A stretch of 64,000 bases of DNA from the IMG/VR virus record IMGVR_UViG_3300024336_000005, positions 62,001-126,000 of that record; one strand, written 5' to 3'. Of this stretch, positions 40,773-56,195 are shown in pieces (the first letter of the stretch is position 1; every line of letters starts with the position of its first letter). Made by a program: the position numbers and the translations under genes. The notes under the pieces are model-generated. The model did no database searches, was not told where the DNA came from, and saw only the letters and a program-made list of their open reading frames with translations.

Positions 40773-42416
40773 ATGAACTACGGTAAGACTGTTAGCAACG
40801 CTATCAACAATGGTCCAGTTTCTCAGCCTATCATCGGTAGGCCCGAGATGGTAAAGAACAGCACTGAGGGCTTTGTCTTCAACACCACTTCTGAGGCAGC
40901 GCTTGAGCGCTTCCTCATTCTTGGCACTGAAGGCGGCACTTACTATGCCAGCGAGAGCCGAGCTACAGTTGATGCGGCAAAGAATGTCATCGAGATGGCT
41001 GTTGCTGGCAACGTAGATGTAGTCAGTACCATCATCAAGGTCGCTACTGCTCGTCCCTCTCGTGCGCCAAAGATGGAGCCTTCCTTGTTTGCTCTTGCAG
41101 TTTGTACCGCAAAGGGCACCCCCGAGGTAAAAGCTAAGGCGCTCAGCGCGCTGAGCGCGGTTTGCCGTATCCCCACTCATCTGTTTACCTTTCTTCAGGC
41201 CCACAAGGATCTGGGAGGCAAGACCGGTGGGCGCAGCTTCCAGCGAGCCCTACAGAATTGGTATCTTGAGAAGGATCCCTCTAAGCTGGCTTATCAGGTT
41301 GTGAAGTATCAGGGGAGGAATGGCTGGACTCACCGTGATGTTCTTCGGCTTGCCCGCCCTAAGGCTCAGACCCCTGAGCAGAACTCTATTTTGAGTTGGG
41401 CTGTGAATGGTTCGCTGCCTCTGGCAGTAAGTTCTGAAGCGGGTGCTTATCTTGTGGCGGCGAATGAGCTGCTGCGAGGGGAGCCGACGAAGCAGCGTGC
41501 AATCAACTTGATTGAGTCTCATGGGTTCACCCATGAGATGGTTCCGACTAAGCTTCAGAAGGACCCTGATATCTGGGCAGCTTTGCTTCCCCGCATGCCT
41601 ATCAATGCAATGGTTCGCAACCTTGGTCGGATGACTGCCAATGGTCTGATTGTTCCATTCAGTGCCACAACTCAGAGCGTGGTGGAGAAGCTTGAGAATG
41701 TGGATGCCCTTCGCAAGAGCCGCATCCATCCGCTCAACGTTTACGTGGCCTTGCGTACCTATCAGCAGGGCAAGGGCACTCGAGGTTCGTTGACTTGGCG
41801 TCCTGATGCTCAGATCTTGAGCGCACTAGAAGGAGCATTCTACAATGCTTTCGGGAATGTAGAACCGACTGGTAAGCGCTTCATGGTGGGCCTGGATGTA
41901 AGCGGCAGCATGGGTGGATTCTATGGCTACGGCTATAACAGTACTGTGAACCAGACTGGCCTTATGGGGATTCCTGGGTTTACGCCTTATGAGGCAGAAA
42001 CCCTTATGTCCCTTTTGGTTGCAAAGACTGAGAAGCAGACCTTCTTTGGTGGGTTTTCAGACAACTTCACTCCCCTTGCTATCAACTCCCGTGATAACAT
42101 GAGCTCGGCTCTTCAGAAGATCCGATCACTCCGCATGGGTTCCACTAGGATTGCTGCTCCGATGGAGTATGCCACCAAGAACAGGATTCCGGTGGATTGC
42201 TTCCAGATCTACACCGACAATGAAGTGAACATGGGCGGACATCCTTGTCAGACCCTTGAGAAGTATCGTCAGGCTACTGGCATCAATGCGGCCATGGTCG
42301 TATGCGCTATGACCTCTACGAATTTCACTGTGGCCGACCCGAAGGATCCGAAGCAGCTTGATGTTGTTGGATTTGACACGGCAGTGCCAGCTTTGATTCG
42401 ACAGCTTTTGGTGTAA
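40773..42416 (+). CDS. rsr: Ro60/Rsr TROVE-domain RNA-binding protein
   Basis: LERFLILGTEGGTYY, KYQGRNGWTHRDVLRLARP, VRNLGRMT, IHP, vWA MIDAS DVSGSM, YTDNE, DVVGFD. Confidence 0.97.
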   Translation: MNYGKTVSNAINNGPVSQPIIGRPEMVKNSTEGFVFNTTSEAALERFLILGTEGGTYYASESRATVDAAKNVIEMAVAGNVDVVSTIIKVATARPSRAPKMEPSLFALAVCTAKGTPEVKAKALSALSAVCRIPTHLFTFLQAHKDLGGKTGGRSFQRALQNWYLEKDPSKLAYQVVKYQGRNGWTHRDVLRLARPKAQTPEQNSILSWAVNGSLPLAVSSEAGAYLVAANELLRGEPTKQRAINLIESHGFTHEMVPTKLQKDPDIWAALLPRMPINAMVRNLGRMTANGLIVPFSATTQSVVEKLENVDALRKSRIHPLNVYVALRTYQQGKGTRGSLTWRPDAQILSALEGAFYNAFGNVEPTGKRFMVGLDVSGSMGGFYGYGYNSTVNQTGLMGIPGFTPYEAETLMSLLVAKTEKQTFFGGFSDNFTPLAINSRDNMSSALQKIRSLRMGSTRIAAPMEYATKNRIPVDCFQIYTDNEVNMGGHPCQTLEKYRQATGINAAMVVCAMTSTNFTVADPKDPKQLDVVGFDTAVPALIRQLLV

Positions 42417-42432
42417 GAGAAAGGAGACTTTA

Positions 42433-42876
42433 GTGGACATTCGCACTCGCAAAGACATCCCCTCTAATTGGGGTGGCCCATATAAGGCCATCAAAATTAC
42501 CTCTGTTACAGCAACCGTATATAATGGCAAGGCCTCAGACTGCGCAATCACCGCCTCCTGGTTTAGTGATTTTAGCAGTCTGCAGTCTGACCCTTATTTG
42601 CTAATTAACCTAGGGACCGAAGACTGCTATCCATGTCGCATGGATGCCTTCTTCGATGCTTATTCTCCTAATGGCGATGGCAGCTTTTCCAAGCGAGACA
42701 GTGCCCCTGGTAAGGAAGAACGATTTTTAATTCCAGAGGGAATCAGTGTAAATGTTCATACACTTGAAGGAATTAGCGCCATAGTCGGTCCTAGCTATTT
42801 GGTTGTTGGCACTCAAGGTGAGGTGTATCACAATAGTATAGATTGGGCCAATGAGAATCTTCACTTTGTAAGTTAA
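42433..42876 (+). CDS. hypothetical phage protein
   Basis: ORF directly after rsr. Confidence 0.7.
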   Translation: MDIRTRKDIPSNWGGPYKAIKITSVTATVYNGKASDCAITASWFSDFSSLQSDPYLLINLGTEDCYPCRMDAFFDAYSPNGDGSFSKRDSAPGKEERFLIPEGISVNVHTLEGISAIVGPSYLVVGTQGEVYHNSIDWANENLHFVS

Positions 42877-42886
42877 TCATTTTCTG

Positions 42887-43080
42887 AAGAACTGATGTAA
42901 GAAGATTATCACAACTATAACGGCCCTAAGGTAGCGAGAGTCGGGCGACCGATGTTCCGCAATATAGACTCCTAATTCTCCAGTAGAATAAGAGTACGTG
43001 CTCAATGCCGTATCCCACTTTGTGGAGCGGTAATAGCGGCAGGGGTTCAACCCCTATTTCTTCTTCAACTCTTTGTTCTT
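42887..43080 (+). ncRNA. putative Y RNA 1
   Basis: 5' AAGAACTGA pairs with 3' TTGTTCTT; AAGAAGA/TCTTCTT upper stem. Confidence 0.7.
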
Positions 43081-43090
43081 GAGATTCAAA

Positions 43091-43816
43091 ATGAAAATAC
43101 AATATGTAAGTGATGTTCACACTGAATTTCACAAAGATTTGGGAATTCAGTGGGCTAAAACGATTCCTGTTGAAGGGGATGTTTTAGTTCTTGCTGGTGA
43201 TATTGTTATTTTCGAGAACCTCATTCAGGTCTTGACAATCATTTGTAATCGCTTTTCGAAGGTGGTATTTGTTAGCGGCAATCATGAGTATTACCGTTCA
43301 GATCGTAAAACGATTCATAACAAACTGCAAAAGATTGCAAATAAGTTTGACAATTTCCATCATTTAAATAATAATGTAGTTGTCATTGAGGATATACGCT
43401 TCGTCGGTACGACACTTTGGTGGAGCGCCCCTCCTTATGCTTGGCTAGCCATCATGAATGGCTTGAACGACTTTAGTCAGATACTTGGGTATCGCAAATG
43501 GGTCAGCCAGGCAAACATAAAAGCCAAACAGTTTCTACAAGAGAATGTGCGAGAAGGTGATATTGTTATCACCCATCATGCACCAACTTGGGAGGCGCAC
43601 CGACGGCGACAGTTGGGTAATGGAGTAATGCATTTTGCTTATTACAACAACTTAGATGATTTGATCCTTGATAACAAACCAAAATATTGGATTTATGGAC
43701 ACACGCACCATGAAGATCAATTTTCTATAGGGGATACACTTTTAGTGAATTCCCCGCATGATTATTGTCCTTATGAGGGCGGTTGGCCGAAGAAATTCGG
43801 CCTTTTAGATGTCTAG
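43091..43816 (+). CDS. metallophosphoesterase
   Basis: SDVH, LAGDI, GNHE, THHAP, YGHTH; AT-rich. Confidence 0.88.
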   Translation: MKIQYVSDVHTEFHKDLGIQWAKTIPVEGDVLVLAGDIVIFENLIQVLTIICNRFSKVVFVSGNHEYYRSDRKTIHNKLQKIANKFDNFHHLNNNVVVIEDIRFVGTTLWWSAPPYAWLAIMNGLNDFSQILGYRKWVSQANIKAKQFLQENVREGDIVITHHAPTWEAHRRRQLGNGVMHFAYYNNLDDLILDNKPKYWIYGHTHHEDQFSIGDTLLVNSPHDYCPYEGGWPKKFGLLDV

Positions 43817-43923
43817 AAGGGTAGGCTGTTTTAAGCCGAGGGCAGACCCGTTAAGGGTCTCGCGAGCTAAGGAGGCGGAAGGGCCTTAGCTGATAGAGGT
43901 GAATCATTAGAACGACCTCTTAT

Positions 43924-44012
43924 GCCAGATGATGACCTAATTGGATAGGCGACACACTGTGAATGTGTTTGGCGAAAGCCTTTAGCGGGTTCGAATCCCG
44001 TCATTTGGCCCA
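43924..44012 (+). tRNA. trnH: tRNA-His(GUG) with long variable arm
   Basis: G-1:C73, ACACA-CTGTGAA-TGTGT, GGC-GAAA-GCC extra arm, CCA. Confidence 0.88.
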
Positions 44013-44013
44013 T

Positions 44014-44100
44014 ATGAACTGAAGTGATTTCTTTATTACAAACCATTTAAGTTGGGTAACGGCGTTGTGGCACCCATTAGAAGTTACACTATTTGTTCAT
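44014..44100 (+). ncRNA. putative Y RNA 2
   Basis: ATGAACTGA / TTGTTCAT; starts right after tRNA CCA. Confidence 0.7.
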
Positions 44101-44103
44101 TTT

Positions 44104-44174
44104 GCTATTGTTTCTAGGTGAGAGGCCTGTGTGGTATACAGGTCAACAGGGTTCGATTCCCTGCAGTAGCACCA
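44104..44174 (+). tRNA. trnT: tRNA-Thr(GGU), short D arm
   Basis: GCTATTG/CAGTAGC, CCTGT-GTGGTAT-ACAGG, ACCA. Confidence 0.7.
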
Positions 44175-44250
44175 TAAGGGCGTGCACCGGGACTCATACT
44201 CCCCTTTAAAACCCTTAAGGTTAGTGAGATCTGATCACCTCGCTGGCTCT

Positions 44251-44324
44251 GAGACCCTAGTCTAATGGTAGGGCAGCGGATTGCAACCCCGCTAATTCCG
44301 GTTCAAGTCCGGAGGGTTTCTCCA
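44251..44324 (+). tRNA. trnC: tRNA-Cys(GCA)
   Basis: GCGGA-TTGCAAC-CCCGC, U73, CCA. Confidence 0.9.
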
Positions 44325-44379
44325 GATGTTACTAGCATCACCTGAGTCTCGACATGGCGTCAACTAGTCGAGGCTCTAC

Positions 44380-44455
44380 GGCCTTATAGGATAATGGCTA
44401 ATCCACCCGATTCTCATTCGGGATATGGCGGGTTCGACTCCCCCTAAGGTCACCA
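44380..44455 (+). tRNA. trnE: tRNA-Glu(CUC)
   Basis: CCCGA-TTCTCAT-TCGGG, ACCA. Confidence 0.88.
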
Positions 44456-44456
44456 T

Positions 44457-44523
44457 ACGAACTGAAGATATTACGTTACCAAACTGTTAATTTGCTCATG
44501 CGTAATTTCAACCATTTGTTCGT
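44457..44523 (+). ncRNA. putative Y RNA 3 (minimal, carries an Asn-type anticodon loop)
   Basis: ACGAACTGA / TTGTTCGT; CAAA-CTGTTAA-TTTG. Confidence 0.7.
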
Positions 44524-44528
44524 TTTAA

Positions 44529-44602
44529 GGCAGTACACCACGGGCTGGTAGGTGCGGTTCATATTCGTCATCGCAAGGGTTCGAGTCCCTTTGCTGCTAC
44601 CA
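44529..44602 (+). tRNA. degenerate tRNA, probable CAU anticodon
   Basis: GGCAGTA/TGCTGCT acceptor, T-arm, ACCA; weak D and anticodon stems. Confidence 0.5.
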
Positions 44603-44641
44603 CTGACTAGGGTGAGGTCATCAATTTGAAAGACAGGACGA

Positions 44642-44908
44642 ATGCATCCTTTTAGAAAACATCTAGAGATAGAAACTACAAAATCAGGTTCTCTGATTTC
44701 TGTCTATGGACAACCTTCTTGGGTGCAACTTTTCTTTCTTTACATAGATGCTATGGATAAGATGGGACATTCTTTTTACAGAGACTCATCCTTCTACAAA
44801 GAGAGGCTAGAGCTTCTAATCAGAACGGGAAGGTCCAATCGAATTCGTATATGTTGCAGGACGCTTAATAAGCGTTCTAAAAAGCTTCTAAAAGAGATAG
44901 TTGATTAG
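44642..44908 (+). CDS. hypothetical protein
   Basis: ORF. Confidence 0.6.
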   Translation: MHPFRKHLEIETTKSGSLISVYGQPSWVQLFFLYIDAMDKMGHSFYRDSSFYKERLELLIRTGRSNRIRICCRTLNKRSKKLLKEIVD

Positions 44909-44916
44909 AGGAACAA

Positions 44917-45204
44917 ATGGCTTGCAAGATTTGTGGATACAGAAAGAATGTGGCCTTTGGATGCTACGGTCACGAAGAAGAGGCTAAAGTAGAAGAGCCA
45001 AAGGCTGCCGCTTCTTTTGAAATGATGGTTGTAAGCTATCAGTTGGATCGTGGATATGGCCAAGGCTGGGAGAAGCTTTTCACTTGTGCTGACAACAAGA
45101 ATCTTGCTGGTGATTGGCGTGTAACGCCTAATGAATATGGGCATTGGCCGGCTTCGCAGATGCAGAAGCATATGAGAAATGAGGGCCTTCCCCTCTCCGA
45201 TTGA
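44917..45204 (+). CDS. hypothetical protein
   Basis: RBS, ORF. Confidence 0.75.
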   Translation: MACKICGYRKNVAFGCYGHEEEAKVEEPKAAASFEMMVVSYQLDRGYGQGWEKLFTCADNKNLAGDWRVTPNEYGHWPASQMQKHMRNEGLPLSD

Positions 45205-45306
45205 AGATCATAACTGAAGATTCAGTCTTTGTTTGTAAGGCTCCCTACACCGAATGGGAAGACACTGGCAAGATTCCTTTCTGAAGTCTTATGAGAGAGA
45301 GTTAAA

Positions 45307-45693
45307 ATGACTATTGGTTATGTTATCGCCTGGGCTTTATTTTATGTAATGTGTTCAACTCCTTTCCTCTTTGCTGTGGTTTCATCTAGTGGAAAGCAAA
45401 TTGATGCCTTCATTGAGACAAAAGCACATTGGCCAACATGGCTATATGCGTCTTTTTGCTTTTTCATCTGGAGTGGAGTCTTTTTGCTTTCCCCTCTGAT
45501 CGCACTTGTTTTGGGGATTTTCTATTCGACAAAAGGACTAAAGATCTCCTATCGAGAAAGAGAAGTCGAACGGCAGTACATTCTTAAGAAAAGGGAGAGG
45601 ATGACAAAGCTTCAAAAGCGTTCTGGTGGCAGTCTCTCCCTCTCTAAAAACCGACAGCAGGGCATGCTTTCTAAAATTCCTATAGAAAAGTGA
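45307..45693 (+). CDS. membrane protein
   Basis: TM segments. Confidence 0.7.
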   Translation: MTIGYVIAWALFYVMCSTPFLFAVVSSSGKQIDAFIETKAHWPTWLYASFCFFIWSGVFLLSPLIALVLGIFYSTKGLKISYREREVERQYILKKRERMTKLQKRSGGSLSLSKNRQQGMLSKIPIEK

Positions 45694-45810
45694 AAAAGTG
45701 CCCAAAAATATTGTTGGGTTTTAGAAAAAGGATTTTTCAAAAATGACGCTATGGTTCCTTGGGTTTATTACCGGCGCCGGCGCCGGCCTTCTCGGCCATT
45801 CGATTTTAAC

Positions 45811-46122
45811 ATGGAAAAAGTAGCAGACCTTTGGAGGTTGATCCTCCACATTTGGGACTGGCTGAGAGTGAGCCTTAGGGCTCACGCAGAGAAGTTGATC
45901 CTAATTGTTATGTTTGTTCTTCTTGGTCTCATTGCTTGGGACTATTGGAACGATGAGATTGTAGTGAAACACACAGTTGATCTGTGTGCTCAAGAGGGGA
46001 ATCTTGGTTATCCCGACGAATGTGAATGCATCATCATGCAAGCACTTCTGCAAGAGGATGATCATGCAATGAAGAGACTCTTGGGCAAAGCAGGAGAGTG
46101 TAGGACTCTTCTGGGCGAGTAA
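45811..46122 (+). CDS. membrane-anchored protein
   Basis: start corrected to ATG 45811. Confidence 0.6.
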   Translation: MEKVADLWRLILHIWDWLRVSLRAHAEKLILIVMFVLLGLIAWDYWNDEIVVKHTVDLCAQEGNLGYPDECECIIMQALLQEDDHAMKRLLGKAGECRTLLGE

Positions 46123-46125
46123 AAT

Positions 46126-46165
46126 ACGGCAGTGGTGTAATGGTAGCACGAGGGATTCCAAACCT
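46126..46165 (+). pseudogene. 5' half of split tRNA-Trp(CCA)
   Basis: ACGGCAG..AGGGA-TTCCAAA-CC; pairs 7/7 with CTGCCGT at 46849-46855. Confidence 0.85.
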
Positions 46166-46172
46166 GTTGCAT

Positions 46173-46244
46173 ACGCCCTTAGCCAAATGGTAAGGCAGCG
46201 GATTCCAAACCCGTGATTTGTAGGTTCGATCCCTACAGGGCGTG
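46173..46244 (+). tRNA. trnW: tRNA-Trp(CCA), intact copy inside the split gene
   Basis: ACGCCCT/AGGGCGT, GCGGA-TTCCAAA-CCCGT, G73. Confidence 0.93.
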
Positions 46245-46246
46245 CA

Positions 46247-46795
46247 TTATTTAAAGGGGCCATCTTGATTTAGATAGTGATCAACTTGATGACAGGTAGG
46301 ACAAAGAATTTCTAAGTTCTCAATAGAACTATCAAGCTTATCTCTATTTTTATGATGAACCTGTAATACATTTGGATACTCACTCCATCCACATTGTGCA
46401 CAAACAAGTTTAAGTTGCTCAAAAGCAATGGCCCTGTATCCACCTTTTATATATCTACCATTTTTGTAGTTGCTTCCTTTGGAGCCTGATCTAAAAAAGG
46501 TGTTAGCACAGCTTCTGCTACAAACAGTCTTTTCTTTTGGATGTCCTTTAAGAGTCTCAAATTCCTTTAGGCATTGTGGGCATTCTTTTAATACTGTCTG
46601 ATACTTCCTTCTAGGATTTTTCCAATGAGAAATATCTAAAGCCTCTTTTGAAATTCTTGAACGCAGAGCCTGATAAGGCGCATTGTCTATTCCAAGAATT
46701 TCAAATAATTCCTTTCCGCAGGAAGCTGTTTCTACTGCTGCAGCGAAAGATTTAGTCGAATATAACCAGATTCTTGATTTCTTTTTGTGGTTCAT
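46247..46795 (-). CDS. HNH homing endonuclease (antisense, AT-rich)
   Basis: CPQC..CSRSC Zn finger; CAQCG..LQVHHKNRDK..NLEILCPTCH. Confidence 0.9.
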   Translation of the reverse strand: MNHKKKSRIWLYSTKSFAAAVETASCGKELFEILGIDNAPYQALRSRISKEALDISHWKNPRRKYQTVLKECPQCLKEFETLKGHPKEKTVCSRSCANTFFRSGSKGSNYKNGRYIKGGYRAIAFEQLKLVCAQCGWSEYPNVLQVHHKNRDKLDSSIENLEILCPTCHQVDHYLNQDGPFK

Positions 46796-46827
46796 GCATA
46801 CCTCCTAAGGACACAATAACAAAGATT

Positions 46828-46856
46828 CGGTCAGGGTTCAAGTCCTTGCTGCCGTG
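46828..46856 (+). pseudogene. 3' half of split tRNA-Trp
   Basis: CAGGG-TTCAAGT-CCTTG T-arm, CTGCCGT-G acceptor strand. Confidence 0.85.
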
Positions 46857-46878
46857 CAAAATGAAAGAAGAAAACAAC

Positions 46879-47130
46879 ATGCAAGCACATCACTATTTGA
46901 GAGATCACTTCATTCGCAACAATGCCCTCTCTCGTTCTGAAACTCCCTATGGACCTTATAGGGGCTATGTTACTGGTACGTCAGTCTATGATAAGGCTAG
47001 CGGCAATGTGACAGTAGAAGATATTAAGATCCTGAATGGGATTTCCTTTGGGCAAGCAACAGCTGTTAGAATCTGCAAGGAGAATCCTAACCGTATTCTC
47101 ATCAAGTACACTTGTGATTCGACAGACTGA
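46879..47130 (+). CDS. hypothetical protein
   Basis: start corrected. Confidence 0.65.
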   Translation: MQAHHYLRDHFIRNNALSRSETPYGPYRGYVTGTSVYDKASGNVTVEDIKILNGISFGQATAVRICKENPNRILIKYTCDSTD

Positions 47131-47312
47131 TGAATGTTAACGATGTAGTTACAGTAAAGGCAGGTCCTAATAAGACCCCTTATGAATGTCTTGTAAGGTA
47201 TATTTATCCTAATGAAGATGTCCTCTTGGAGCTTCCTAATTTTCTGGGGAACAACCTTAGGTATCAACGTTGGAATAAGTCCTTAAAGAAGTATCGGTCC
47301 GCAAGGACCTAA
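47130..47312 (+). CDS. hypothetical protein
   Basis: TGATG coupling. Confidence 0.65.
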   Translation: MNVNDVVTVKAGPNKTPYECLVRYIYPNEDVLLELPNFLGNNLRYQRWNKSLKKYRSART

Positions 47313-47318
47313 AGATTT

Positions 47319-47493
47319 ATTGAACTGAAGAGATCTAGGTTATCACTATAAAGGCTCGGCCCTCTTAACAGAGGTTTGCAGGTTCGAATCCTGTCGATCC
47401 GAAAGGATCGTGGCGAAATGGTAAACGCACCGAATATAAGTACCGGGGACCTTGAAAGAGGAATCCAATCTCCTAACTCGTCCCTTGTTCAAT
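47319..47493 (+). ncRNA. putative Y RNA 4, YrlA-type with permuted tRNA domain
   Basis: ATTGAACTGA/TTGTTCAAT; T-arm GCAGG-TTCGAAT-CCTGT, CGATCC-GAAA-GGATCG, D-arm GCG-AAATGGTAAA-CGC. Confidence 0.85.
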
Positions 47494-47498
47494 GATTT

Positions 47499-47583
47499 GG
47501 CTCTCAGGTTCCACGGTGGGACAACCGGCTGTAAACCGGTCGCGTTAAATCGCTACTAGGTTCGATTCCTAGGGGAGCCACCA
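47499..47583 (+). tRNA. trnY: tRNA-Tyr(GUA)
   Basis: ACCGG-CTGTAAA-CCGGT, variable arm, ACCA; extended D stem. Confidence 0.88.
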
Positions 47584-47584
47584 C

Positions 47585-47737
47585 GAAAGTCTGGTAGCAG
47601 TTCAGGATGTTTCCCTTAAGGCTCCTGGAGTGGGTGCAACTCCTATACTTTCATTAGAGGAGCTTATAGCCTGCAGGCTTGTAAGAGCGACAGTGTGGCC
47701 ACACTGTGATAGGGTTTGAGTCCCTGTGCCTCTGCCA
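47585..47737 (+). other. two degenerate tRNA-like elements (about 47585-47651 and 47656-47737)
   Basis: acceptor-like ends and T-like arms (GTGGG-TGCAACT-CCTAT; TAGGG-TTTGAGT-CCCTG, GCCA) but no canonical anticodon arm. Confidence 0.4.
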
Positions 47738-49132: not shown

Positions 49133-49250
49133 TTGAACTGAAGGATATTGGTTATCTTTTCTGAACAAAAACGTGCTGGGTTCGATTCCCAGGGGTTCCA
49201 TAAGGGGCCCGCAGGCGCCTAGTAAACTTCCGATTCCACCCCTTGTTCAA
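49133..49250 (+). ncRNA. putative Y RNA 5, YrlA-type
   Basis: TTGAACTGA/TTGTTCAA; T-arm CTGGG-TTCGATT-CCCAG then closed stem GGGTTCC-ATAA-GGGGCCC. Confidence 0.8.
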
Positions 49251-50765: not shown

Positions 50766-50780
50766 TAAGATTTGAATTAA

Positions 50781-50868
50781 CTAGCGAGCGGGCGGTGGAC
50801 GCCCAACCGTGCTGTACAGCGGTGGTGCTTTGATGCACAACTGGGTTCGATTCCTAGGCGCTAGACCA
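50781..50868 (+). tRNA. Tyr-like class II tRNA with 8-nt anticodon loop
   Basis: ACCGT-GCTGTACA-GCGGT, GTGC..GCAC arm, 5-bp D stem, ACCA. Confidence 0.65.
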
Positions 50869-51272: not shown

Positions 51273-51275
51273 AGA

Positions 51276-51461
51276 ATGATTATTCTACTTCTTGTCATCC
51301 TAATTGTAGTGTGTATACTCTCTATTATTGGGTTTCTTTCCTTGGAGGAAAGGGTAAGCAAGGGGGAGAGTGAGCGTGCGGCGATGAGGGTTCTCCTCTT
51401 TAATGAGGAGAAGGATCCTGTGATAGATGTATCTTATACAGAAAGAGGCCGGTATGGATGA
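51276..51461 (+). CDS. small membrane protein
   Basis: TM segment. Confidence 0.65.
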   Translation: MIILLLVILIVVCILSIIGFLSLEERVSKGESERAAMRVLLFNEEKDPVIDVSYTERGRYG

Positions 51462-51729
51462 TGTGATTGTTTCTGCAGCTGAGATGAGAGATAAGATGGT
51501 GGATGTAACTAATGAAGCCAACCGGGGCTTCTTGATTAAGTTGATGACTGACATCTCAATTGCTGCCGCTGCCGGTAAGGGATGTCTTTACTCGTATGAG
51601 ACTCAAGCAATCAAGAGAGTCGCTCTCCACTTAGAGCAAGCAGGATACACTCTTAAGTATGACAACTATCAGGATGAAAGAGATCCTGGTTCCAGAGCTA
51701 GCTATTGTATCACTTGGGGAAAGAGTTAG
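51454..51729 (+). CDS. hypothetical protein
   Basis: overlap; start corrected. Confidence 0.7.
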   Translation: MDDVIVSAAEMRDKMVDVTNEANRGFLIKLMTDISIAAAAGKGCLYSYETQAIKRVALHLEQAGYTLKYDNYQDERDPGSRASYCITWGKS

Positions 51730-51736
51730 GAACATA

Positions 51737-52033
51737 ATGGATTTGCAAATTGGGAACATCTTTGAGTCTGAAAAGCTGTGCAAGAAGCATGGCCTCTACG
51801 GAGCAAAGTTCCTTTGTGTAGGCGTCGAACACATTAGCGCTCGCGATGGCATGGGCGGCATGGATCAAGGCTCTCCTGCTAGCACTATACTCCGGTATCG
51901 TCTGGCCATCAATGGTAGCCTTAGCGGACAAACTCATATGCTAGAATGGAGTGGCTGGCATCCTAAGGACAAGCAATTTGAACCAGATGCAATCGTTGGT
52001 CAAGCCGAGTGGAAGCTTCCAGAATTGACCTAA
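51737..52033 (+). CDS. hypothetical protein
   Basis: start corrected. Confidence 0.7.
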   Translation: MDLQIGNIFESEKLCKKHGLYGAKFLCVGVEHISARDGMGGMDQGSPASTILRYRLAINGSLSGQTHMLEWSGWHPKDKQFEPDAIVGQAEWKLPELT

Positions 52034-52038
52034 GACAT

Positions 52039-52121
52039 GTGCCCTTTGGCGGAATGGTAGACGCACGTAATGGTCCCCTCCGGCTTAGAGGGGTGCAGGT
52101 TCGACTCCTGTAAGGGTGCCA
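52039..52121 (+). ncRNA. tRNA-like RNA lacking a normal anticodon arm
   Basis: acceptor, Leu-type D arm and T arm present; only CGTAATGGT then CCCCTC-CGGCTTA-GAGGGG. Confidence 0.6.
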
Positions 52122-52129
52122 TAAAATAA

Positions 52130-52215
52130 GGCTTGGTGGTGAAACTGGTAGACGCACCAGGCTCAAACCCTGGCGGGGTGAAAGCTCCGTGTCGGTTCGA
52201 TTCCGACCCAAGTCA
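52130..52215 (+). tRNA. trnL: tRNA-Leu(CAA)
   Basis: CCAGG-CTCAAAC-CCTGG, variable arm. Confidence 0.92.
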
Positions 52216-52218
52216 CAC

Positions 52219-52638
52219 ATGAAAGAAATTGAAATGCATATTGATAAGCAATTCTTAGTAAAGCGTAAGGCCTGCCAGCCACAAGTAGATTTATTTGTTG
52301 AGGCTTTTGGGGAGAAGGCTTCCGTTGAGGTGACTACAGAGAACCTCAAGAAAGCCTTCGCTGTTGGACTTGATGTTAGATGGCTGACTGGTCAGTTTAC
52401 TGAGCTCAAGCCCCTGCTAACAGGAAAGTTTGAGTCTTCTGAGATTGTAATCTACTTCCAAGATGGCTTGTTTCATCGTGAAGATGGTCCTGCCATCCAA
52501 TGGAAGGATGGCAATGGAAAGTTTTGGTATCGTCATGGAAAGTCCCACAGGACAGATGGTCCTGCAAGGATGACCCCATGGGGGGACAGCTGGTGGGTTG
52601 ATGGGGTTAAGCAACCCGCTCCCACTGATAAGACTTAA
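52219..52638 (+). CDS. hypothetical protein with HRxDGPA repeats
   Basis: FHREDGPAI, SHRTDGPAR; start corrected. Confidence 0.8.
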   Translation: MKEIEMHIDKQFLVKRKACQPQVDLFVEAFGEKASVEVTTENLKKAFAVGLDVRWLTGQFTELKPLLTGKFESSEIVIYFQDGLFHREDGPAIQWKDGNGKFWYRHGKSHRTDGPARMTPWGDSWWVDGVKQPAPTDKT

Positions 52639-52705
52639 AGCTGAGAGGAAAGCCCCATATTCTAGGAAGCCTTGACAGTTCGGAGAGACGAACGCTTTAT
52701 CTTAT

Positions 52706-53039
52706 CCAGGAGGTGGGCTTAGAAGCAGCCATCCTTTAAAGAGTGGGCATAGATGAAGCTTAACCGATTGATCTTATCTAATCATGACACGGATAGGAGA
52801 AGCTTAAGTTAGCACCTCTCAATAAATTCGAATTGGACCCAGGTTGGCTTCCTGGTTGGCCTTTACGAGAGAGTCTTGTAAGAAAGCGGGAAGAGACTTA
52901 GTCAGTCTTATAAAGAGAGCGAAACCGAACGCAACTCTTTGTTCTATTTTAGAACTGGTGTGAATCCTATGACGGGATGTATTTGGTTAACAAACGAGAG
53001 AATTGACTCTGCCCTCCTTTTAGCGTAATAGCACACTGG
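52706..53039 (+). ncRNA. 23S rRNA H43-H44 (uL11-binding GTPase centre) mimic with 278-nt insertion
   Basis: CCAGGAGGTGGGCTTAGAAGCAGCCATCCTTTAAAGAGT [insert 52745-53022] GCGTAATAGCACACTGG; no other rRNA sequence nearby. Confidence 0.85.
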
Positions 53040-53051
53040 ATAGATAACTTT

Positions 53052-53137
53052 GGCCGGGTGGTGGAACGGTATTCACACTGCGCTTAGAACGCAGCGCCCT
53101 TACGGGATTGAGAGTTCGAATCTCTCCTCGGCTACCA
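53052..53137 (+). tRNA. trnL: tRNA-Leu(UAG)
   Basis: CTGCG-CTTAGAA-CGCAG, ACCA. Confidence 0.93.
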
Positions 53138-53152
53138 TTAGAAAGAGATAAA

Positions 53153-53344
53153 ATGTTTCCAATAGTAAGACTCCTTGACGGAAGAGTTGCGCGTTTTGTT
53201 ATAGAGATGCGTGCCTATCCATCCCACATTGATAGATTCCAAACTCTTGGCAAGAACTCTCAGCAATTAGACCTCCCAGTTGAAGGGTGGACACTGGATG
53301 GTATTGAAAACCATCCAGAAAACCTCCAGTACAAAGAAAGATAA
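53153..53344 (+). CDS. hypothetical protein
   Basis: start corrected. Confidence 0.55.
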   Translation: MFPIVRLLDGRVARFVIEMRAYPSHIDRFQTLGKNSQQLDLPVEGWTLDGIENHPENLQYKER

Positions 53345-53347
53345 ACG

Positions 53348-53641
53348 ATGAGATATGTTTTGATGTGCCTTCTCTTCATGGGATGCACTACAGTGACCTT
53401 CCAGTTGGTGCCCACTCCTGCTCCTACTCTTCCTCCCTCGGCTCAGATGTTGATGGAGGATTGCGATGGCGTTACAGCAGATGATATTTATACACTCATT
53501 GAAGTCGAGCCCTGCAAAGGGCTCGTTCAGATGAGAGAACAAAGACTGTTAGATGCAGAGAGAATTTGTGAAGAATACTGCACTGAAAAAGATTGGTGCC
53601 ATGATCCAGATGAACGATTCGATTACGAAAGGGTAGAATAA
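53348..53641 (+). CDS. putative lipoprotein
   Basis: lipobox FMGC. Confidence 0.7.
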   Translation: MRYVLMCLLFMGCTTVTFQLVPTPAPTLPPSAQMLMEDCDGVTADDIYTLIEVEPCKGLVQMREQRLLDAERICEEYCTEKDWCHDPDERFDYERVE

Positions 53642-54369
53642 TGAAGTTGAACCAAGCTCTAGCCATTGAGACTGGCACGAAGACTAACACCAAGAGGAAG
53701 ATGACTGATCTTTACAAGCTGATTCAGAAGGCTTCTGCCTTTAATGGATTCGTAAAGACCTACGAGCCTCGAGCTGAAGATGGGATTGAGTTCCCGTCTG
53801 AGTCACAGGTTGTGCAGACGACCGCAGAGGAGGCTCTGCGGGGCGTCCTTGAGGCATCAGAGGAGCTGGTAAACATCACTGCTACGATTGCTTTCTCTAA
53901 CCTTTCTGCTCTTGCGGATGTGGTTGTTGACGGTGAGGTTGTGGCTAAGGATGTTCCTGCCACTCATCTGATCTACTTGGAGAAGCACCTGGCTGAGCTA
54001 GCGACTGTGGTCGCTGCTCTTCCGACGTTGGATCCAAGCAAGCAGTGGACCAAGAATGAAGCCACTGGATACTACGAGACGAAGCCGACAACGACTACTC
54101 GTACTCAGAAGATCCAGGAGGCTCTCGTTCTGTACCCTGCAACTCCTGAGCATCCAGCTCAGACTCAGCTCATCAGCAAGGATGTAGTGATCGGTGACTG
54201 GACTGTGATTTCACAGTCAGGTGCTATCCCTGCTCCTGAGAAGAAGAGGCTACAGAAGAGGGTTCAGTCCCTCCTAGAGGCCACGAAGATTGCTCGCGCC
54301 AAGGCGAACCTGGCTAACGCACCGCGTCAGGACCTGGGCACTGCGGTAAGCAACTTCCTTCTTGCATAA
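53641..54369 (+). CDS. conserved hypothetical protein (KLNQ..A.E.G family)
   Basis: MKLNQALAIETG, TYEPRAEDG, LEKHL, ATPEHPAQ; I recall similar proteins in actinobacteria and phages, function unknown. Confidence 0.85.
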   Translation: MKLNQALAIETGTKTNTKRKMTDLYKLIQKASAFNGFVKTYEPRAEDGIEFPSESQVVQTTAEEALRGVLEASEELVNITATIAFSNLSALADVVVDGEVVAKDVPATHLIYLEKHLAELATVVAALPTLDPSKQWTKNEATGYYETKPTTTTRTQKIQEALVLYPATPEHPAQTQLISKDVVIGDWTVISQSGAIPAPEKKRLQKRVQSLLEATKIARAKANLANAPRQDLGTAVSNFLLA

Positions 54370-54378
54370 GAATTCCGA

Positions 54379-54598
54379 GAGGACAATCTAAGATTTAATC
54401 TTAGACTAAACGTCACTGACATCTAGGTTCGAATCCTAGGCCCGCAACCATGTGCCTGCGCGATGCATCATAAGCAGCTCTTCAATGGGGGAGTGGTGGG
54501 TGAAAGTCCCATGGCACAACATAATGCGGGTTGGCGAAACTGGTATACGCGGGGACTTGTCCCTGTCAGACATGACACTTAAGCTTAAGCTATTCCTC
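54379..54598 (+). ncRNA. circularly permuted tRNA-like RNA on a long stem
   Basis: T-arm + GCCCGCA-ACCA precede TGCGGGT + D-arm; closed by CTGACA/TGTCAG and GAGGA/TCCTC. Confidence 0.8.
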
Positions 54599-54658
54599 TA
54601 CGCTTAGCTTGCTGAATCAATATCTAAATCAACGGATACAATCAAACTATAGGAAGAC

Positions 54659-54686
54659 GAAGGTTGGATTCCTTCCGGGGTGACCA
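54659..54686 (+). other. orphan tRNA 3' fragment
   Basis: GAAGG-TTGGATT-CCTTC, CGGGGTG-A-CCA; no matching 5' half seen nearby. Confidence 0.45.
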
Positions 54687-54687
54687 T

Positions 54688-54746
54688 AGATGAACTGTTT
54701 GAGAGGGGTTGATCATGACTTTTCGCTATGCACAGATGGTTCATCT
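54688..54746 (+). ncRNA. hairpin RNA, possible variant Y RNA
   Basis: AGATGAACTG / GGTTCATCT; lacks the exact UUGUUC strand. Confidence 0.4.
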
Positions 54747-54838
54747 TTAACACCTTGTCGTACAGCTGCAAGTACATCCTTTATAAAGCTCAGAGTGTAT
54801 CGATGCCGTTAGATAATGAGACAGGATAAAATAAAATT

Positions 54839-54873
54839 GGTCTAGCAGACAGGTTAGTTCTGCTGGACCACCA
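54839..54873 (+). ncRNA. 11-bp minihelix ending in ACCA
   Basis: GGTCTAGCAGA/TCTGCTGGACC + ACCA. Confidence 0.5.
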
Positions 54874-54874
54874 A

Positions 54875-54948
54875 GGGCCTTTAGCTCATTTGGGCAGAGC
54901 GCTGCACTTGCAATGCGGAGGTGATCGGTTCAATCCCGATAAGGTCCA
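54875..54948 (+). tRNA. trnA: tRNA-Ala(UGC)
   Basis: CTGCA-CTTGCAA-TGCGG, G3:U70. Confidence 0.93.
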
Positions 54949-54978
54949 GTTAGTTAGAATCATTGAAGGAAGAAGAAG

Positions 54979-55359
54979 ATGTTTAAAGATTGTATTCTTA
55001 TAGTTTGGGCTCCTGATGCAGCTAAACTTGAGAGCCTACCTTCAGGCTCAGTTGCTGCACTGATGGAGACAATGTGGTTTGCTCCTCCTGATCCTTATGA
55101 ATCCTTTCAATACTTGAAAGAGAAATTCAACATAAAGGACAGAGCTTTGCGTCTGGCTGGAAGGTCTTACGATCTTGATATCGTAAGCCTTAACCTATCT
55201 TCAGCTCAGATGAAAGAGTGGGCAAAGGATGCACACATTCCCTATCTTAGGTTTAATGAGACATCGTGGAAGGATCGGAACTTGGATGTTGGCGATTTAG
55301 CAGCTGTTACGATGTGTCTGTTGGGTTCATCAGACACTAGGTATATTGATACACTATAG
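54979..55359 (+). CDS. hypothetical protein, weakly Pth2-like
   Basis: ORF; C-terminal AHIPYLRFNE..G..AAVT pattern. Confidence 0.7.
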   Translation: MFKDCILIVWAPDAAKLESLPSGSVAALMETMWFAPPDPYESFQYLKEKFNIKDRALRLAGRSYDLDIVSLNLSSAQMKEWAKDAHIPYLRFNETSWKDRNLDVGDLAAVTMCLLGSSDTRYIDTL

Positions 55360-55372
55360 AAAGGGATTCGAA

Positions 55373-55636
55373 ATGAAGATTAATCGCGAGACAGAGAGTA
55401 CTTTTATTGCCGAGCTTAATGAGCTCGAGCTTAAGATTTTTGTGGGTCTGTTGGCCTTCGTTAGGATGGAAGAGACTGGTGCGGGTGAAGCTGTATATGA
55501 CATGCTTGAGGCATGTGAAGGCGCACTTGAGCTAAACGATGATGAGCTAGACGATCAGATCTTTAGCAAGGTCTTCTCCTATGAGGTTGATGGTGGCCAT
55601 CATGGACTTGATGTAAGTGGCTTTGATGTCCAGTAG
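55373..55636 (+). CDS. acidic hypothetical protein
   Basis: ORF. Confidence 0.7.
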   Translation: MKINRETESTFIAELNELELKIFVGLLAFVRMEETGAGEAVYDMLEACEGALELNDDELDDQIFSKVFSYEVDGGHHGLDVSGFDVQ

Positions 55637-56045
55637 TGGGGTCCATGATCTCATAAAGGAGAGGTTTAATCAGGGGGATGTGCGCGCCGGGTGCAGTTGT
55701 CCTGATGGATGGGTCCCCTTGGTTGAGAAGCTTGTGAATCATATCCACTGGGTCTTAACTCATGGGATCACATGGGACCAACAGCACGGTGGCTTTCCTG
55801 ATAGAAGTCTTGCCTTTGAGGTGACTCAAGTTAAGAGTAAGTTTGGCGGCCTTAGATTTTACTATGATATGCGAGGGGATACAGACTGTTCTCTCGCGTA
55901 TAAGATAAGAGGGGCGATGGCTTTTGCTGAGTCCCTCTCGTACACAATCTGTATGGATTGTGGTGCGACAGATGATGTTTGCATAAGGAAGCCGGGGTGG
56001 TTAGCTACCCTCTGTCCTTCTTGTGCTGCTAAAGGGGTGGCTTAG
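55626..56045 (+). CDS. conserved phage hypothetical protein
   Basis: GWVPLV..QVKSKFGGLRFYY..CMDCG. Confidence 0.8.
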   Translation: MSSSGVHDLIKERFNQGDVRAGCSCPDGWVPLVEKLVNHIHWVLTHGITWDQQHGGFPDRSLAFEVTQVKSKFGGLRFYYDMRGDTDCSLAYKIRGAMAFAESLSYTICMDCGATDDVCIRKPGWLATLCPSCAAKGVA

Positions 56046-56058
56046 CGGCCACCTTATT

Positions 56059-56195
56059 AAAGAACTGACGATTTTAGATTATCATTATACCAAACCAATA
56101 AAGAGAGGGTTCGACTCCCCAGGGATGGTGAAGTGGTTTCACACATAGGCTCAAATCCTATGGAATTCCTTATTCTAAATCAATTTTTGTTCTTT
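56059..56195 (+). ncRNA. putative Y RNA 6 with T-arm, D-like arm and anticodon stem-loop
   Basis: AAAGAACTGA/TTGTTCTTT; GAGGG-TTCGACT-CCCC; ATAGG-CTCAAAT-CCTAT. Confidence 0.75.

What the first reader, a model, noticed from the sequence alone, without database searches (positions are those of the whole stretch)
40773..56195. Phage Ro60 with a family of six Y-RNA-like genes sharing a covarying U-bulged helix
Seen: six intergenic RNAs (42887, 44014, 44457, 47319, 49133, 56059) begin xxGAACTGA and end TTGTTCxx. The outer pairs covary: AA/TT, AT/AT, AC/GT, ATT/AAT, TT/AA, AAA/TTT. Each has a pyrimidine-rich 3' internal loop. Three start 1 nt after a tRNA CCA. Established: Ro60 binds a Y-RNA helix GUC-[C bulge]-GA/UU-GAC, and Y RNAs tether Ro60 to effectors through their distal domain. 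Here the helix is AAC-[U bulge]-GA/UU-GUU. Inference: one Ro60 scaffold with a modular set of interchangeable RNA adaptors (67-194 nt). I know of no described locus with this many paralogs.
Basis: partly seen in the sequence, partly recalled or inferred. Interest (0 to 1): 0.93.

Follow-up and report, generated by a model that had tools for sequence, protein, structure and literature searches.

The report
Phage Ro60 with six Y RNAs
An uncultivated marine jumbo phage encodes the RNA-chaperone ring Ro60 plus six bacterial-type Y RNAs scattered through its tRNA gene array; the kind is known, but the copy number, the tRNA-flush layout and a ribosomal-RNA-like module in one copy are new details.

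Summary
The window, from a 204-kb IMG/VR contig, encodes an intact Ro60 (40773-42416). Six + strand intergenic RNAs of 67-194 nt close with nnGAAC-U-GA...UU-GUUCnn. Shuffles give 0.06 such pairs.

They are Y RNAs of the YrlA/YrlB kind.
- A model of the closing module finds 98 copies in 76 Ro60-carrying viral loci. All lie on the Ro60 strand, 84 within 1 kb of the gene, with strong covariation.
- The closest relative phage keeps the helix as GAGC-C-GA/UU-GCUC and has at least seven copies, two of them clear orthologues.
- Three copies (R4-R6) have a tRNA-like distal part. R1 has only a T-arm-like hairpin. Two are short hairpins.
- Five abut tRNA genes by 1-6 nt, so release by tRNA-processing enzymes is likely. 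This is inferred.

New here: R1 carries a 25-nt block, 24/25 identical to 23S rRNA (H69 loop to H70), then an H71-like hairpin. Two other Ro60-linked Y RNAs share it.

Arrays of 3-5 Y RNAs beside phage Ro60 are common, and the U bulge is a minority variant (9 of 98). Ro60 binding and separate effectors remain untested.

Verdict: an enlarged, tRNA-embedded variant of a known system, of moderate interest.

The parts
40773..42416 (+). Ro60 (TROVE + vWA/MIDAS) gene, 547 aa
   Evidence: Pfam PF05731 and PF25045. PDB matches to human Ro60 9nen at 2.7e-108, Xenopus 1yvp at 1e-104 and Deinococcus Rsr 2nvo at 5e-96. The MIDAS motif DVSGS sits at residues 375-379. K178 and R182 align with Xenopus K170 and R174.
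42887..43080 (+). Y RNA R1, 194 nt. It has the Ro-type closing module, the UUAUC motif, a 23S-like block and a T-arm-like hairpin (GGGGUUCAACCCC) near the 3' side.
   Evidence: 45.8 bits with model R2. It lies 471 nt after the Ro60 stop codon and before the metallophosphoesterase gene.
42913..42937 (+). Block inside R1 that is 24/25 identical to 23S rRNA (H69 loop, its 3' strand and the junction to H70). It is followed by an H71-like hairpin GUCGG-GCGA-CCGAU.
   Evidence: blastn against Salmonella 23S NR_076079 positions 1953-1977, E 4e-5. The same GGUCCUAAGGUAGC block sits at the same relative place in the Ro60-linked Y RNAs L084 6199-6369 and L358 8074-8254.
44014..44100 (+). Y RNA R2, 87 nt, short form without a T arm. 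It lies between tRNA-His (ends 44012) and tRNA-Thr (starts 44104).
   Evidence: 38.1 bits.
44457..44523 (+). Y RNA R3, 67 nt, minimal YrlB-like form. It lies between tRNA-Glu (ends 44455) and tRNA-Met (starts 44529).
   Evidence: 45.3 bits with short-form model R1, E 2e-9.
47320..47492 (+). Y RNA R4, 173 nt, YrlA-like. A T arm (GCAGG-UUCGAAU-CCUGU), an AS hairpin and a D-like arm follow in that order. tRNA-Tyr starts at 47499.
   Evidence: 61.1 bits. Rfam YrlA RF02553 scores 21.1 bits, E 0.22, over 47376-47428. It is the orthologue of L002 14842-14994 at 77% identity.
49133..49250 (+). Y RNA R5, 118 nt, with a T arm and an AS hairpin. It starts 1 nt after the CCA of tRNA-Lys.
   Evidence: 71.4 bits. 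It is the orthologue of L002 13757-13876 at 85% identity, with compensatory changes in helix 1, helix 2, the T stem and the AS stem.
56060..56194 (+). Y RNA R6, 135 nt, with a T-like arm and two further hairpins. It ends 3 nt before tRNA-Glu (56198).
   Evidence: 64.5 bits. It lies 13.6 kb from Ro60.
43925..44602 (+). tRNA block His-[R2]-Thr-Cys-Glu-[R3]-Met, in which Y RNAs take the place of spacers.
   Evidence: ARAGORN and Rfam. The spacers between tRNA and Y RNA are 1-5 nt.
43091..43816 (+). Metallophosphoesterase gene. It is a conserved neighbour of Ro60 in L002, L006 and probably L003.
   Evidence: Pfam Metallophos, PHROG 1649 and synteny.
47296..47309 (+). GC-rich hairpin GGUCC-GCAA-GGACC, 10 nt upstream of R4. 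It may mark a transcript end or a processing site (inferred).
   Evidence: Read from the sequence and listed. A similar hairpin at 56036-56053 precedes R6.

Best explanation
The locus is a phage Ro60 ribonucleoprotein system with an enlarged set of six bacterial-type Y RNAs (the YrlA/YrlB class).

Each RNA closes with the same module. This is a 6-bp terminal helix, one bulged pyrimidine, a G-U and an A-U pair, an asymmetric internal loop, a second 7-9-bp helix and a UUAUC (YUAY) motif. In animal and bacterial Y RNAs the equivalent region is what Ro60 binds on its outer surface.

The distal parts differ.
- Three copies (R4, R5, R6) carry a tRNA-like part with a T arm, and in R4 and R5 an acceptor-like hairpin.
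- R1 has only a T-arm-like hairpin near its 3' side, and it also carries a 23S-rRNA-like block.
- R2 and R3 are bare hairpins.

The genes sit inside the phage tRNA array, flush with tRNA ends. The most likely route is co-transcription with the tRNAs. RNase P cutting at the 5' end of the next tRNA would then free the Y RNA 3' end. The endonuclease that frees the tRNA 3' end would free the Y RNA 5' end.

Once bound, the Y RNAs would gate Ro60's cavity. They would also tether Ro60 to partners such as host PNPase or tRNA- and rRNA-handling enzymes. This would serve RNA quality control or repair during infection, next to the phage RNA ligase and phosphoesterases.

Shown here: the family, its structure, its linkage to Ro60 and its layout. 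Inferred: transcription, processing, Ro60 binding and partners.
For: 1. The six-fold occurrence is far above chance (6 against 0.063).
2. The module is tied to Ro60. Model R1 gives 98 hits in 1.5 Mb of viral DNA. All are on the Ro60 strand, 84 within 1 kb and 97 within 4 kb of the gene. Model R2 gives 76 further hits, again all on that strand.
3. Covariation is strong. 94.1% of cells are paired against 66% in shuffles, 445 cells have changes on both sides against 141, and 0 of 500 shuffles reach the observed values. Slid controls give 38-45% paired.
4. Between the window and its nearest relative L002, the helix changes from GAAC/GUUC to GAGC/GCUC and the outer pairs swap. Helix 2, the T stem and the AS stem carry compensatory changes in the orthologue pairs R5/L002c and R4/L002e.
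5. The G-U pair next to the bulge is G-U in 85 of 95 sequences. It works only in the + strand RNA, which argues against a DNA-level repeat.
6. L002 copies match the published YrlA motif GNCGAAG exactly. The UUAUC equals the published YUAY. The order T arm, AS hairpin, D arm equals YrlA (PMC4201824). Rfam YrlA scores L002g at 40.7 bits, higher than the mycobacteriophage Catera locus, whose family of phages the 2014 paper listed (36.1 bits). It scores R4 at 21.1 bits.
7. Ro60 is intact, with its MIDAS motif and the K170/R174 equivalents.
8. A phage Ro60 has been shown to bind two phage Y-like RNAs and host PNPase (Thermus phage phiLo, PMC12135203).
Against: - There is no direct evidence of expression. 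Contigs from a seawater metatranscriptome cover the region only patchily at depth 1-9. They show no enrichment over the RNAs, and R2 is not covered at all.
- No Rfam family reaches its gathering score.
- The published 5' motif is not met literally in the window. It reads ACUGAAG, ACUGAUG or ACUGACG instead of GNCGAAG.
- R4-R6 lie 4.9-13.6 kb from Ro60, beyond the 4 kb at which the family is normally found.
- No PNPase or other known partner is encoded in the window.
- The position aligned to Xenopus H187, in the central cavity, is Arg here.
Confidence: 0.8

Rival explanations
1. The elements are punctuation of the tRNA array. On this reading they are structured spacers that guide RNase P, RNase E or RNase Z cutting, or protect tRNA precursors, and have no role with Ro60.
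For: Five of the six touch tRNA genes with spacers of 1-6 nt. The L002 copies do the same.
Against: In 76 other viral loci the same module sits next to Ro60, mostly with no tRNA nearby. Most tRNA junctions in this window have no such element. R1 touches no tRNA.
Confidence: 0.05
2. They are Y RNA-derived tRNA and rRNA mimics that act mainly on their own. On this reading they serve as decoys or sponges for host tRNA- or rRNA-directed defence nucleases or modification enzymes, and Ro60 only stabilises them.
For: They carry T-arm modules, and R1 carries a 23S-like block. YrlA is known to be a substrate of TruB, DusA and RNase P (PMC4201824). An RNA ligase and two phosphoesterases lie in the same island. 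The 23S-like block also occurs in phage elements with no Ro60 in the fetched flank.
Against: The Ro-type module is the most conserved part and covaries in every copy. That would not be needed for a free decoy. The short forms R2 and R3 have no mimic module at all.
Confidence: 0.1
3. They are DNA-level repeats such as miniature inverted-repeat elements, homing sites or recombination sites. On this reading the 23S-like block in R1 is a homing-endonuclease target. It is nearly identical to the I-CeuI site as I recall it.
For: The ends are inverted repeats. The copies have different flanking tRNAs in the window and in L002, as if they moved. The block matches a classic rDNA homing site. An HNH endonuclease gene lies at 8265-8834.
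Against: All 174 hits of the two models in the fetched loci share the Ro60 strand. The G-U pairs are valid on one strand only. Compensatory changes keep the pairing rather than the sequence. No target-site duplications are seen, and no endonuclease gene lies beside the copies.
Confidence: 0.03

Closest known systems
YrlA and YrlB of Salmonella Typhimurium and Mycobacterium smegmatis, and the YrlA-like RNAs of mycobacteriophages and other phages (Chen et al. 2014, PMC4201824; Rfam RF02553)
   Same: They are encoded on the Ro60 strand. They share the 5' motif of the GNCGAAG type paired with a 3' UUG segment, the YUAY motif, and a distal T arm, acceptor-like hairpin and D arm. A short partner without the full tRNA-like part (YrlB) accompanies them. 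M. smegmatis YrlA and YrlB are cut from one precursor, and YrlA is an RNase P substrate.
   Different: There are six copies instead of one to a few. They are spread over 13.6 kb, not within 4 kb. They are inserted between tRNA genes with 1-6-nt spacers. The motif reads ACUGAAG, so the bulge is U. One copy (R1) carries a 23S-like block. All score below Rfam's gathering value.
Thermus phage phiLo Ro60 with Yrl1 and Yrl2 (PMC12135203, 2025)
   Same: It is a phage-encoded Ro60 with phage-encoded Y-like RNAs. Binding has been shown, and a ternary complex with host PNPase forms in vitro.
   Different: PhiLo has two RNAs just upstream of the gene. They were identified by a CGAA motif in an internal bulge. 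No link to a tRNA array and no rRNA-like module were reported.
Deinococcus radiodurans Rsr with Yrn1 and Yrn2, and the RYPER complex with PNPase
   Same: A Y RNA tethers Ro60 to an exoribonuclease. Yrn1 has a T-arm-like element.
   Different: The Deinococcus RNAs are not detectably similar in sequence to this family, and their domain order differs.
Metazoan Y RNAs (Rfam RF00019)
   Same: The closing helix has the same architecture: three or four pairs, a bulged pyrimidine, then GA paired with UU. A pyrimidine-rich internal loop is also present.
   Different: There was no model match. Metazoan Y RNAs are Pol III transcripts with an oligo-U tail and La binding. They have no tRNA-like domain.

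Membership tests
Bacterial/phage Y RNA, YrlA type (Chen et al. 2014; Rfam RF02553) | Encoded on the same strand as a Ro60 orthologue and within about 4 kb of it | tested here: inconclusive
   All six are on the Ro60 strand. R1-R3 lie 0.5-2.0 kb away, but R4-R6 lie 4.9, 6.7 and 13.6 kb away.
Bacterial/phage Y RNA, YrlA type (Chen et al. 2014; Rfam RF02553) | GNCGAAN0-1G motif near the 5' end | tested here: not met
   The window copies read ACUGAAG (R2-R5), ACUGAUG (R1) and ACUGACG (R6). The first G is A, with a compensating U on the 3' strand, and the C is U. The L002 orthologues read GCCGAAG, an exact match. This is a derived variant rather than an absence.
Bacterial/phage Y RNA, YrlA type (Chen et al. 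2014; Rfam RF02553) | Conserved YUAY that opens the distal (V) region | tested here: met
   UUAU(C) follows helix 2 in R1, R2, R4, R5 and R6, and UUAC follows it in R3. Alignment columns 27-30 are T, T, A and T/C in 75-98 of 98 family members.
Bacterial/phage Y RNA, YrlA type (Chen et al. 2014; Rfam RF02553) | tRNA-like domain with a T arm, an acceptor-like hairpin and a D arm in that order | tested here: inconclusive
   R4 has all three. R5 has the T arm and the AS hairpin, with an unclear D arm. R6 has a T-like arm and two hairpins. R1 has only a T-like hairpin. R2 and R3 have none.
Bacterial/phage Y RNA, YrlA type (Chen et al. 2014; Rfam RF02553) | Reaches the Rfam gathering score of 69 bits | tested here: not met
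   R4 scores 21.1 bits, L002g 40.7, L002e 23.7 and the others give no hit. The YrlA region of mycobacteriophage Catera also reaches only 36.1 bits, so the threshold excludes known phage members too.
Bacterial/phage Y RNA, YrlA type (Chen et al. 2014; Rfam RF02553) | Bound by the cognate Ro60 | not testable with these tools
   This needs EMSA or RIP. The indirect support is the genomic linkage of the module to Ro60.
YrlB-like short Y RNA | Ro-type closing module with only a small distal hairpin, encoded beside a YrlA-type RNA and Ro60 | tested here: met
   R3 scores 45.3 bits and R2 16.8 bits with the short-form model. Ninety-eight such RNAs occur in 76 loci.
Metazoan Y RNA (RF00019) | Match to the family model, and a Pol III or oligo-U 3' end | tested here: not met
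   There was no hit at E up to 10. The RNAs end in a helix followed by a tRNA gene, not in a U run.

The most novel reading that the evidence does not exclude
One phage Ro60 is served by a set of adaptor RNAs whose distal modules mimic different cellular RNAs. These are tRNA in R4-R6 and the H69-H71 region of 23S rRNA in R1.

The adaptors are produced stoichiometrically with the phage tRNAs by the tRNA-processing machinery. The ring would then be directed to, or would decoy, distinct host tRNA- and rRNA-handling enzymes or defence nucleases.

The rRNA-mimic Y RNA subclass (R1, L084 and L358) would be a new kind of Y RNA effector module.
Probability: 0.25. Interest if true: 0.8.

Novelty: new variant of a known kind. 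Interest (0 to 1): 0.55.

Why it matters
What the variable half of a Y RNA does is still the central open question for Ro60. Only PNPase tethering is established in bacteria.

A phage that keeps six paralogues with one invariant Ro-type module and clearly different distal modules is a natural set of swaps. At least two of the paralogues have been conserved as orthologues, at 77-85% nucleotide identity. Meanwhile Ro60 itself has drifted to 53% amino-acid identity. The set can be tested directly by pulling down each RNA and asking what comes with it.

The flush tRNA junctions suggest a biogenesis route, via RNase P and tRNA 3' processing. For Y RNAs this route has so far only been hinted at for M. 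smegmatis YrlA.

The 23S-like block in R1 points to ribosomal RNA or its enzymes as a possible target. That fits older genetics linking bacterial Ro60 to rRNA maturation and decay.

The survey also shows that searches limited to 4 kb around Ro60, or to Rfam thresholds, miss most phage Y RNAs.

Tried and rejected
- DNA similarity of the locus to 50,697 deposited phage genomes gave no match. The phage has no cultured relative.
- The Rfam gathering and E-value scans gave no Y RNA family at threshold.
- Three home-made scans were either too noisy or too rigid, and added no credible seventh copy. They were a relaxed helix descriptor, an ungapped two-block profile and a relaxed 5'-motif-plus-partner scan.
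- An IMG/VR scan for GAACTGAAG...GGTTATC returned 85 stretches. Only the window's own contig passed the 3'-partner check, so the rest were chance matches.
- The promoter and terminator consensus scan showed no enrichment and gave no help with transcription units.
- Laying metatranscriptome contigs gave patchy, low-depth coverage. One contig ends at 47498, one base before tRNA-Tyr. Assembly graphs break at tRNA sequences anyway, so I do not count this as a processing site.
- Ten-nucleotide matches of other Y RNAs to 16S or 23S rRNA were at noise level. The 11-nt 23S match in L061 is just the family's own 3' module.
- ORF 42433-42876, which together with the long R1 is absent from the relatives, is not a recognisable homing endonuclease. 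It has no Pfam or PHROG hit even at E up to 1.
- I tested whether the adenylosuccinate-synthetase-like gene is PurZ. The tblastn result was ambiguous and I dropped it.


Full report
**What the window is.** The window comes from IMG/VR contig UViG_3300024336_000005, 204 kb long. Its GC content is 50.6%. It carries 26 tRNA genes and a tmRNA, all on the + strand. Most reading frames are small, lie on the same strand and have no known family. The exceptions include an HNH endonuclease, an RNA ligase, two metallophosphoesterases, an HD protein and an adenylosuccinate-synthetase-like protein. No deposited phage genome is similar at the DNA level. Near-identical sequence occurs in seawater metatranscriptome runs. 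A large uncultivated marine phage is the reasonable reading, although no structural gene lies in the window.

**Ro60.** ORF 40773-42416 encodes 547 aa. It has the TROVE and Ro60-vWA domains. It aligns end to end with human, Xenopus and Deinococcus Ro60. The MIDAS motif DxSxS is invariant in an alignment of 20 relatives. K178 and R182 align with Xenopus K170 and R174. From memory, those are the residues whose mutation abolishes Y RNA binding (Sim et al. 2009). The position aligned with cavity residue H187 is Arg here.

**The six RNAs.**
- Each starts with two or three free-varying bases followed by GAACUGA.
- Each ends with UUGUUC plus the complement of the first bases.
- The strict pattern occurs six times against 0.063 in shuffles.
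- All six are on the + strand and in gaps between genes.
- Inside the GA/UU pairs each has a second helix of its own sequence, 7-9 bp with one irregularity. A UUAUC-type motif follows.
- R2, R3 and R5 begin one base after an encoded CCA. R2, R3, R4 and R6 end 2-6 bases before the next tRNA.
- R4 and R6, which follow protein genes, are each preceded by a GC-rich hairpin.

**Is it a real RNA family, and whose?** Three independent lines agree.

1. *The closest relatives.*
- Ro60 proteins at 57, 53 and 51% identity were traced to contigs L003, L002 and L006.
- L002 is a 152-kb contig with the same order, Ro60 then metallophosphoesterase then tRNA array.
- It holds at least seven members within 5.2 kb.
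- In them the helix is GAGC-C-GA/UU-GCUC. An A-U pair has become G-C and the bulge is C.
- R4 and R5 have clear orthologues there, at 77 and 85% identity. Compensatory changes occur in helix 1, helix 2, the T stem and the acceptor-like stem.
- The flanking tRNAs differ between the two phages, so the Y RNA genes behave as cassettes within the array.

2. *A wider survey.*
- I fetched eighty further Ro60-carrying viral loci.
- A covariance model built from 15 short members found 98 matches in 1.5 Mb. Every one lies on the Ro60 strand.
- Of these, 84 lie within 1 kb of the gene and 97 within 4 kb.
- A second model that tolerates long inserts found 76 more-or-less overlapping matches, again all on that strand.
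- On the 95 distinct sequences, 94% of cells pair against 66% after shuffling and 38-45% when partners are slid. There are 445 double changes.
- The alignment was fitted to the model, which inflates these figures somewhat. The relatedness caveat of the shuffle control also applies. Even so, 14 of 16 pairs show double changes, and the window-to-L002 comparison is independent of the model.

3. *The G-U pair next to the bulge.* It is conserved as G-U in 85 of 95 sequences. It would be an A-C mismatch on the other strand, so the constraint acts on + strand RNA.

**Comparison with what is known.** Chen et al. 2014 (PMC4201824) defined bacterial and phage YrlA RNAs by these features:
- proximity to Ro60 on the same strand;
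- a 5' GNCGAAN0-1G motif thought to be the Ro60 site;
- a YUAY that opens the distal region;
- a tRNA-like domain made of a T arm, an acceptor-like hairpin and a D arm.

A shorter YrlB accompanies YrlA. In M. smegmatis both are cut from one precursor, and YrlA is an RNase P substrate.

The viral family found here has the consensus nnGGGC-C-GAAG, helix 2, GGUUAUC ... A-n-Y-n-AC-UU-GCCCnn. This contains that motif literally. The long members have T, AS and D arms in the published order. Rfam's YrlA model scores L002g at 40.7 bits, L002e at 23.7 and window R4 at 21.1. A mycobacteriophage (Catera) locus, of the kind the paper reported, scores 36.1. All are below the gathering score of 69.

The window RNAs are therefore members of this class in a derived state. 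The first G of the motif is A, compensated on the 3' strand. The bulge is U. The U bulge is a minority state, 9 of 98, seen in at least five other loci.

**How unusual is six?** Counting short-form matches only, 23 loci have one copy, 15 have two, 8 have three, 4 have four and 1 has five. Merging both models by hand gives five copies in L025, L066, L076 and L084. It gives four in L011, L013, L015, L029, L044 and L070. The window has six and L002 at least seven, so they top the sample but continue a trend.

What sets this clade apart is the layout. Elsewhere the RNAs form a tight tandem array just upstream of Ro60. Here they are dispersed up to 13.6 kb away, between tRNA genes. Only occasional tRNA adjacency is seen elsewhere, for example L084 9365-9423 before tRNA-Tyr.

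**The distal modules.**
- R4 has a T arm, an AS hairpin and a D-like arm.
- R5 has a T arm and an AS hairpin.
- R6 has a T-like arm and two hairpins, one with a T-loop-like CUCAAAU loop.
- R2 and R3 have only a small hairpin.
- R1 is different. Directly after UUAUCAC comes a 25-nt block, 42913-42937. It is 24/25 identical to 23S rRNA, covering the loop and 3' strand of H69 and the junction to H70. blastn gives E 4e-5. A GUCGG-GCGA-CCGAU hairpin follows, where 23S has H71.

The 14-nt core GGUCCUAAGGUAGC occurs at the same relative position in two other Ro60-linked Y RNAs from distant lineages. These are L084 6199-6369 and L358 8074-8254. The latter is followed by a canonical YrlA and then Ro60.

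The same block with a GNRA-capped hairpin after it also occurs in about twenty other viral elements, without a Ro60 in the fetched flank. The generic YrlA distal region (CUUAUAACGG) already resembles the H69 loop over 9-10 nt.

I cannot say what this means. Possible readings are:
- a substrate or partner mimic, for example for H69-modifying enzymes or the 30S subunit;
- a decoy;
- a DNA-level homing site, since the block is nearly the I-CeuI site as I recall it.

The constant position inside three independent Y RNAs favours an RNA-level role.

**Mechanism.** The most likely reading has four steps.
1. The Y RNAs are transcribed with the tRNAs.
2. RNase P cutting at the next tRNA leaves the Y RNA with a 2-6-nt 3' tail, and the cut that frees the preceding tRNA's CCA end frees the Y RNA 5' end.
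3. The closed helix then binds Ro60.
4. The distal modules recruit or occupy partners.

Phage phiLo Ro60 binds two phage Y-like RNAs and forms a complex with host PNPase in vitro (PMC12135203). Jumbo-phage Ro60 has been placed among RNA-repair functions (PMC7824862). The RNA ligase and phosphoesterases in this island fit that picture. None of these steps is shown for this phage.

**Expression.** Contigs of one seawater metatranscriptome cover 41% of the sampled words of 42400-47600 at depth 1-9. They include all of R4 and part of R1, but there is no enrichment, and R2 is uncovered. This shows that the phage is present in RNA libraries, nothing more.

**Verdict.** It is a member of a described class, not a new kind. 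The new points are:
- the six to seven paralogues conserved across two diverged phages;
- their insertion flush between tRNA genes;
- the 23S-like module of R1.

The claim of exceptional copy number is softened by the survey.

Noticed in passing
window 52694-53045 (+), between ORF 52189-52638 and tRNA-Leu 53052: This is an RNA-like element of about 350 nt. Its 5' end (52706-52742) is 34/37 identical to 23S rRNA H43, the L11 and thiostrepton GTPase-associated centre. Its 3' end (53022-53039) is 17/18 identical to H44. About 280 nt are inserted between the two halves.

In 108 of 120 cases an H44-like GCGUAAnAGCACAC lies 57-379 nt downstream. The stem flanks covary, and the element often sits right after a tRNA gene.

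Unannotated copies are present in cultured phages (Pseudomonas pf16, Cronobacter GAP32, Pectobacterium CBB, Xanthomonas XacN1 and Aeromonas 4_4572). Rfam has no family for it, and my paper search found nothing. It looks like a widespread, undescribed phage RNA that mimics the L11-binding domain, and it deserves its own study.
   Followed up: partly
L292-L382 (IMG/VR), e.g. L298, L309, L336, L346, L365, L372, L379: About twenty viral elements share the layout AAC-GGUCCUAAGGUAGC-GAn, then a hairpin with a GNRA loop, then UAGCGA. This is a 23S H69-H71-like module. Most have no Ro60 gene in the fetched flank. Some are preceded by a CCGAAUG motif and a hairpin.
   Followed up: partly
window 23869-24490 (+): The tmRNA gene is 622 nt against a 374-position model, with an insertion of about 340 nt in the pseudoknot region. 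ARAGORN did not call it.
   Followed up: no
window 50781-50868, 59165-59294, 28894-28982 and 52040-52119: These are odd tRNA-like genes. One has an 8-nt anticodon loop (anticodon read as tgta). One is 130 nt long with a long insertion, possibly an intron. Two are borderline tRNA matches at about 29 bits.
   Followed up: no
window 29329-36146: An RNA- and nucleotide-metabolism cluster lies upstream of Ro60. It comprises an HD-domain protein (29329-30105), a metallophosphoesterase (32837-33616), an adenylosuccinate-synthetase-like protein annotated in PHROGs as PurZ-type (33653-34711) and an RNA ligase (34785-36146). Whether the synthetase is PurA or PurZ (2-aminoadenine genomes) was not resolved.
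   Followed up: partly
L002 15814-15887 and 14076-14146: The closest relative phage carries a tRNA with anticodon CUA, of amber-suppressor type. It also carries an unusual tRNA-like sequence with two T-arm-like hairpins directly after Y RNA L002d.
   Followed up: no
L015 9607-9676, L029 9468-9542: ARAGORN calls 'tRNA-Phe' and 'tRNA-Thr' inside Y RNAs that the family models place at L015 9592-9693 and L029 9476-9596. The tRNA-like domain of YrlA-type RNAs is therefore being annotated as tRNA in viral contigs.
   Followed up: no
L086 (Mycobacterium phage Catera) 2562-2903: The 485-nt gap upstream of the Catera Ro gene holds three family members. These are two short forms (2562-2630 and 2838-2903) around the YrlA-type RNA (about 2660-2775). 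None is annotated in the record.
   Followed up: partly
window 42433-42876 (+): A 147-aa ORF with no family sits between Ro60 and R1. It is absent from L002, L003 and L006, where only a short Y RNA of about 55 nt occupies that position. The ORF and the enlarged R1 may have arrived together.
   Followed up: partly
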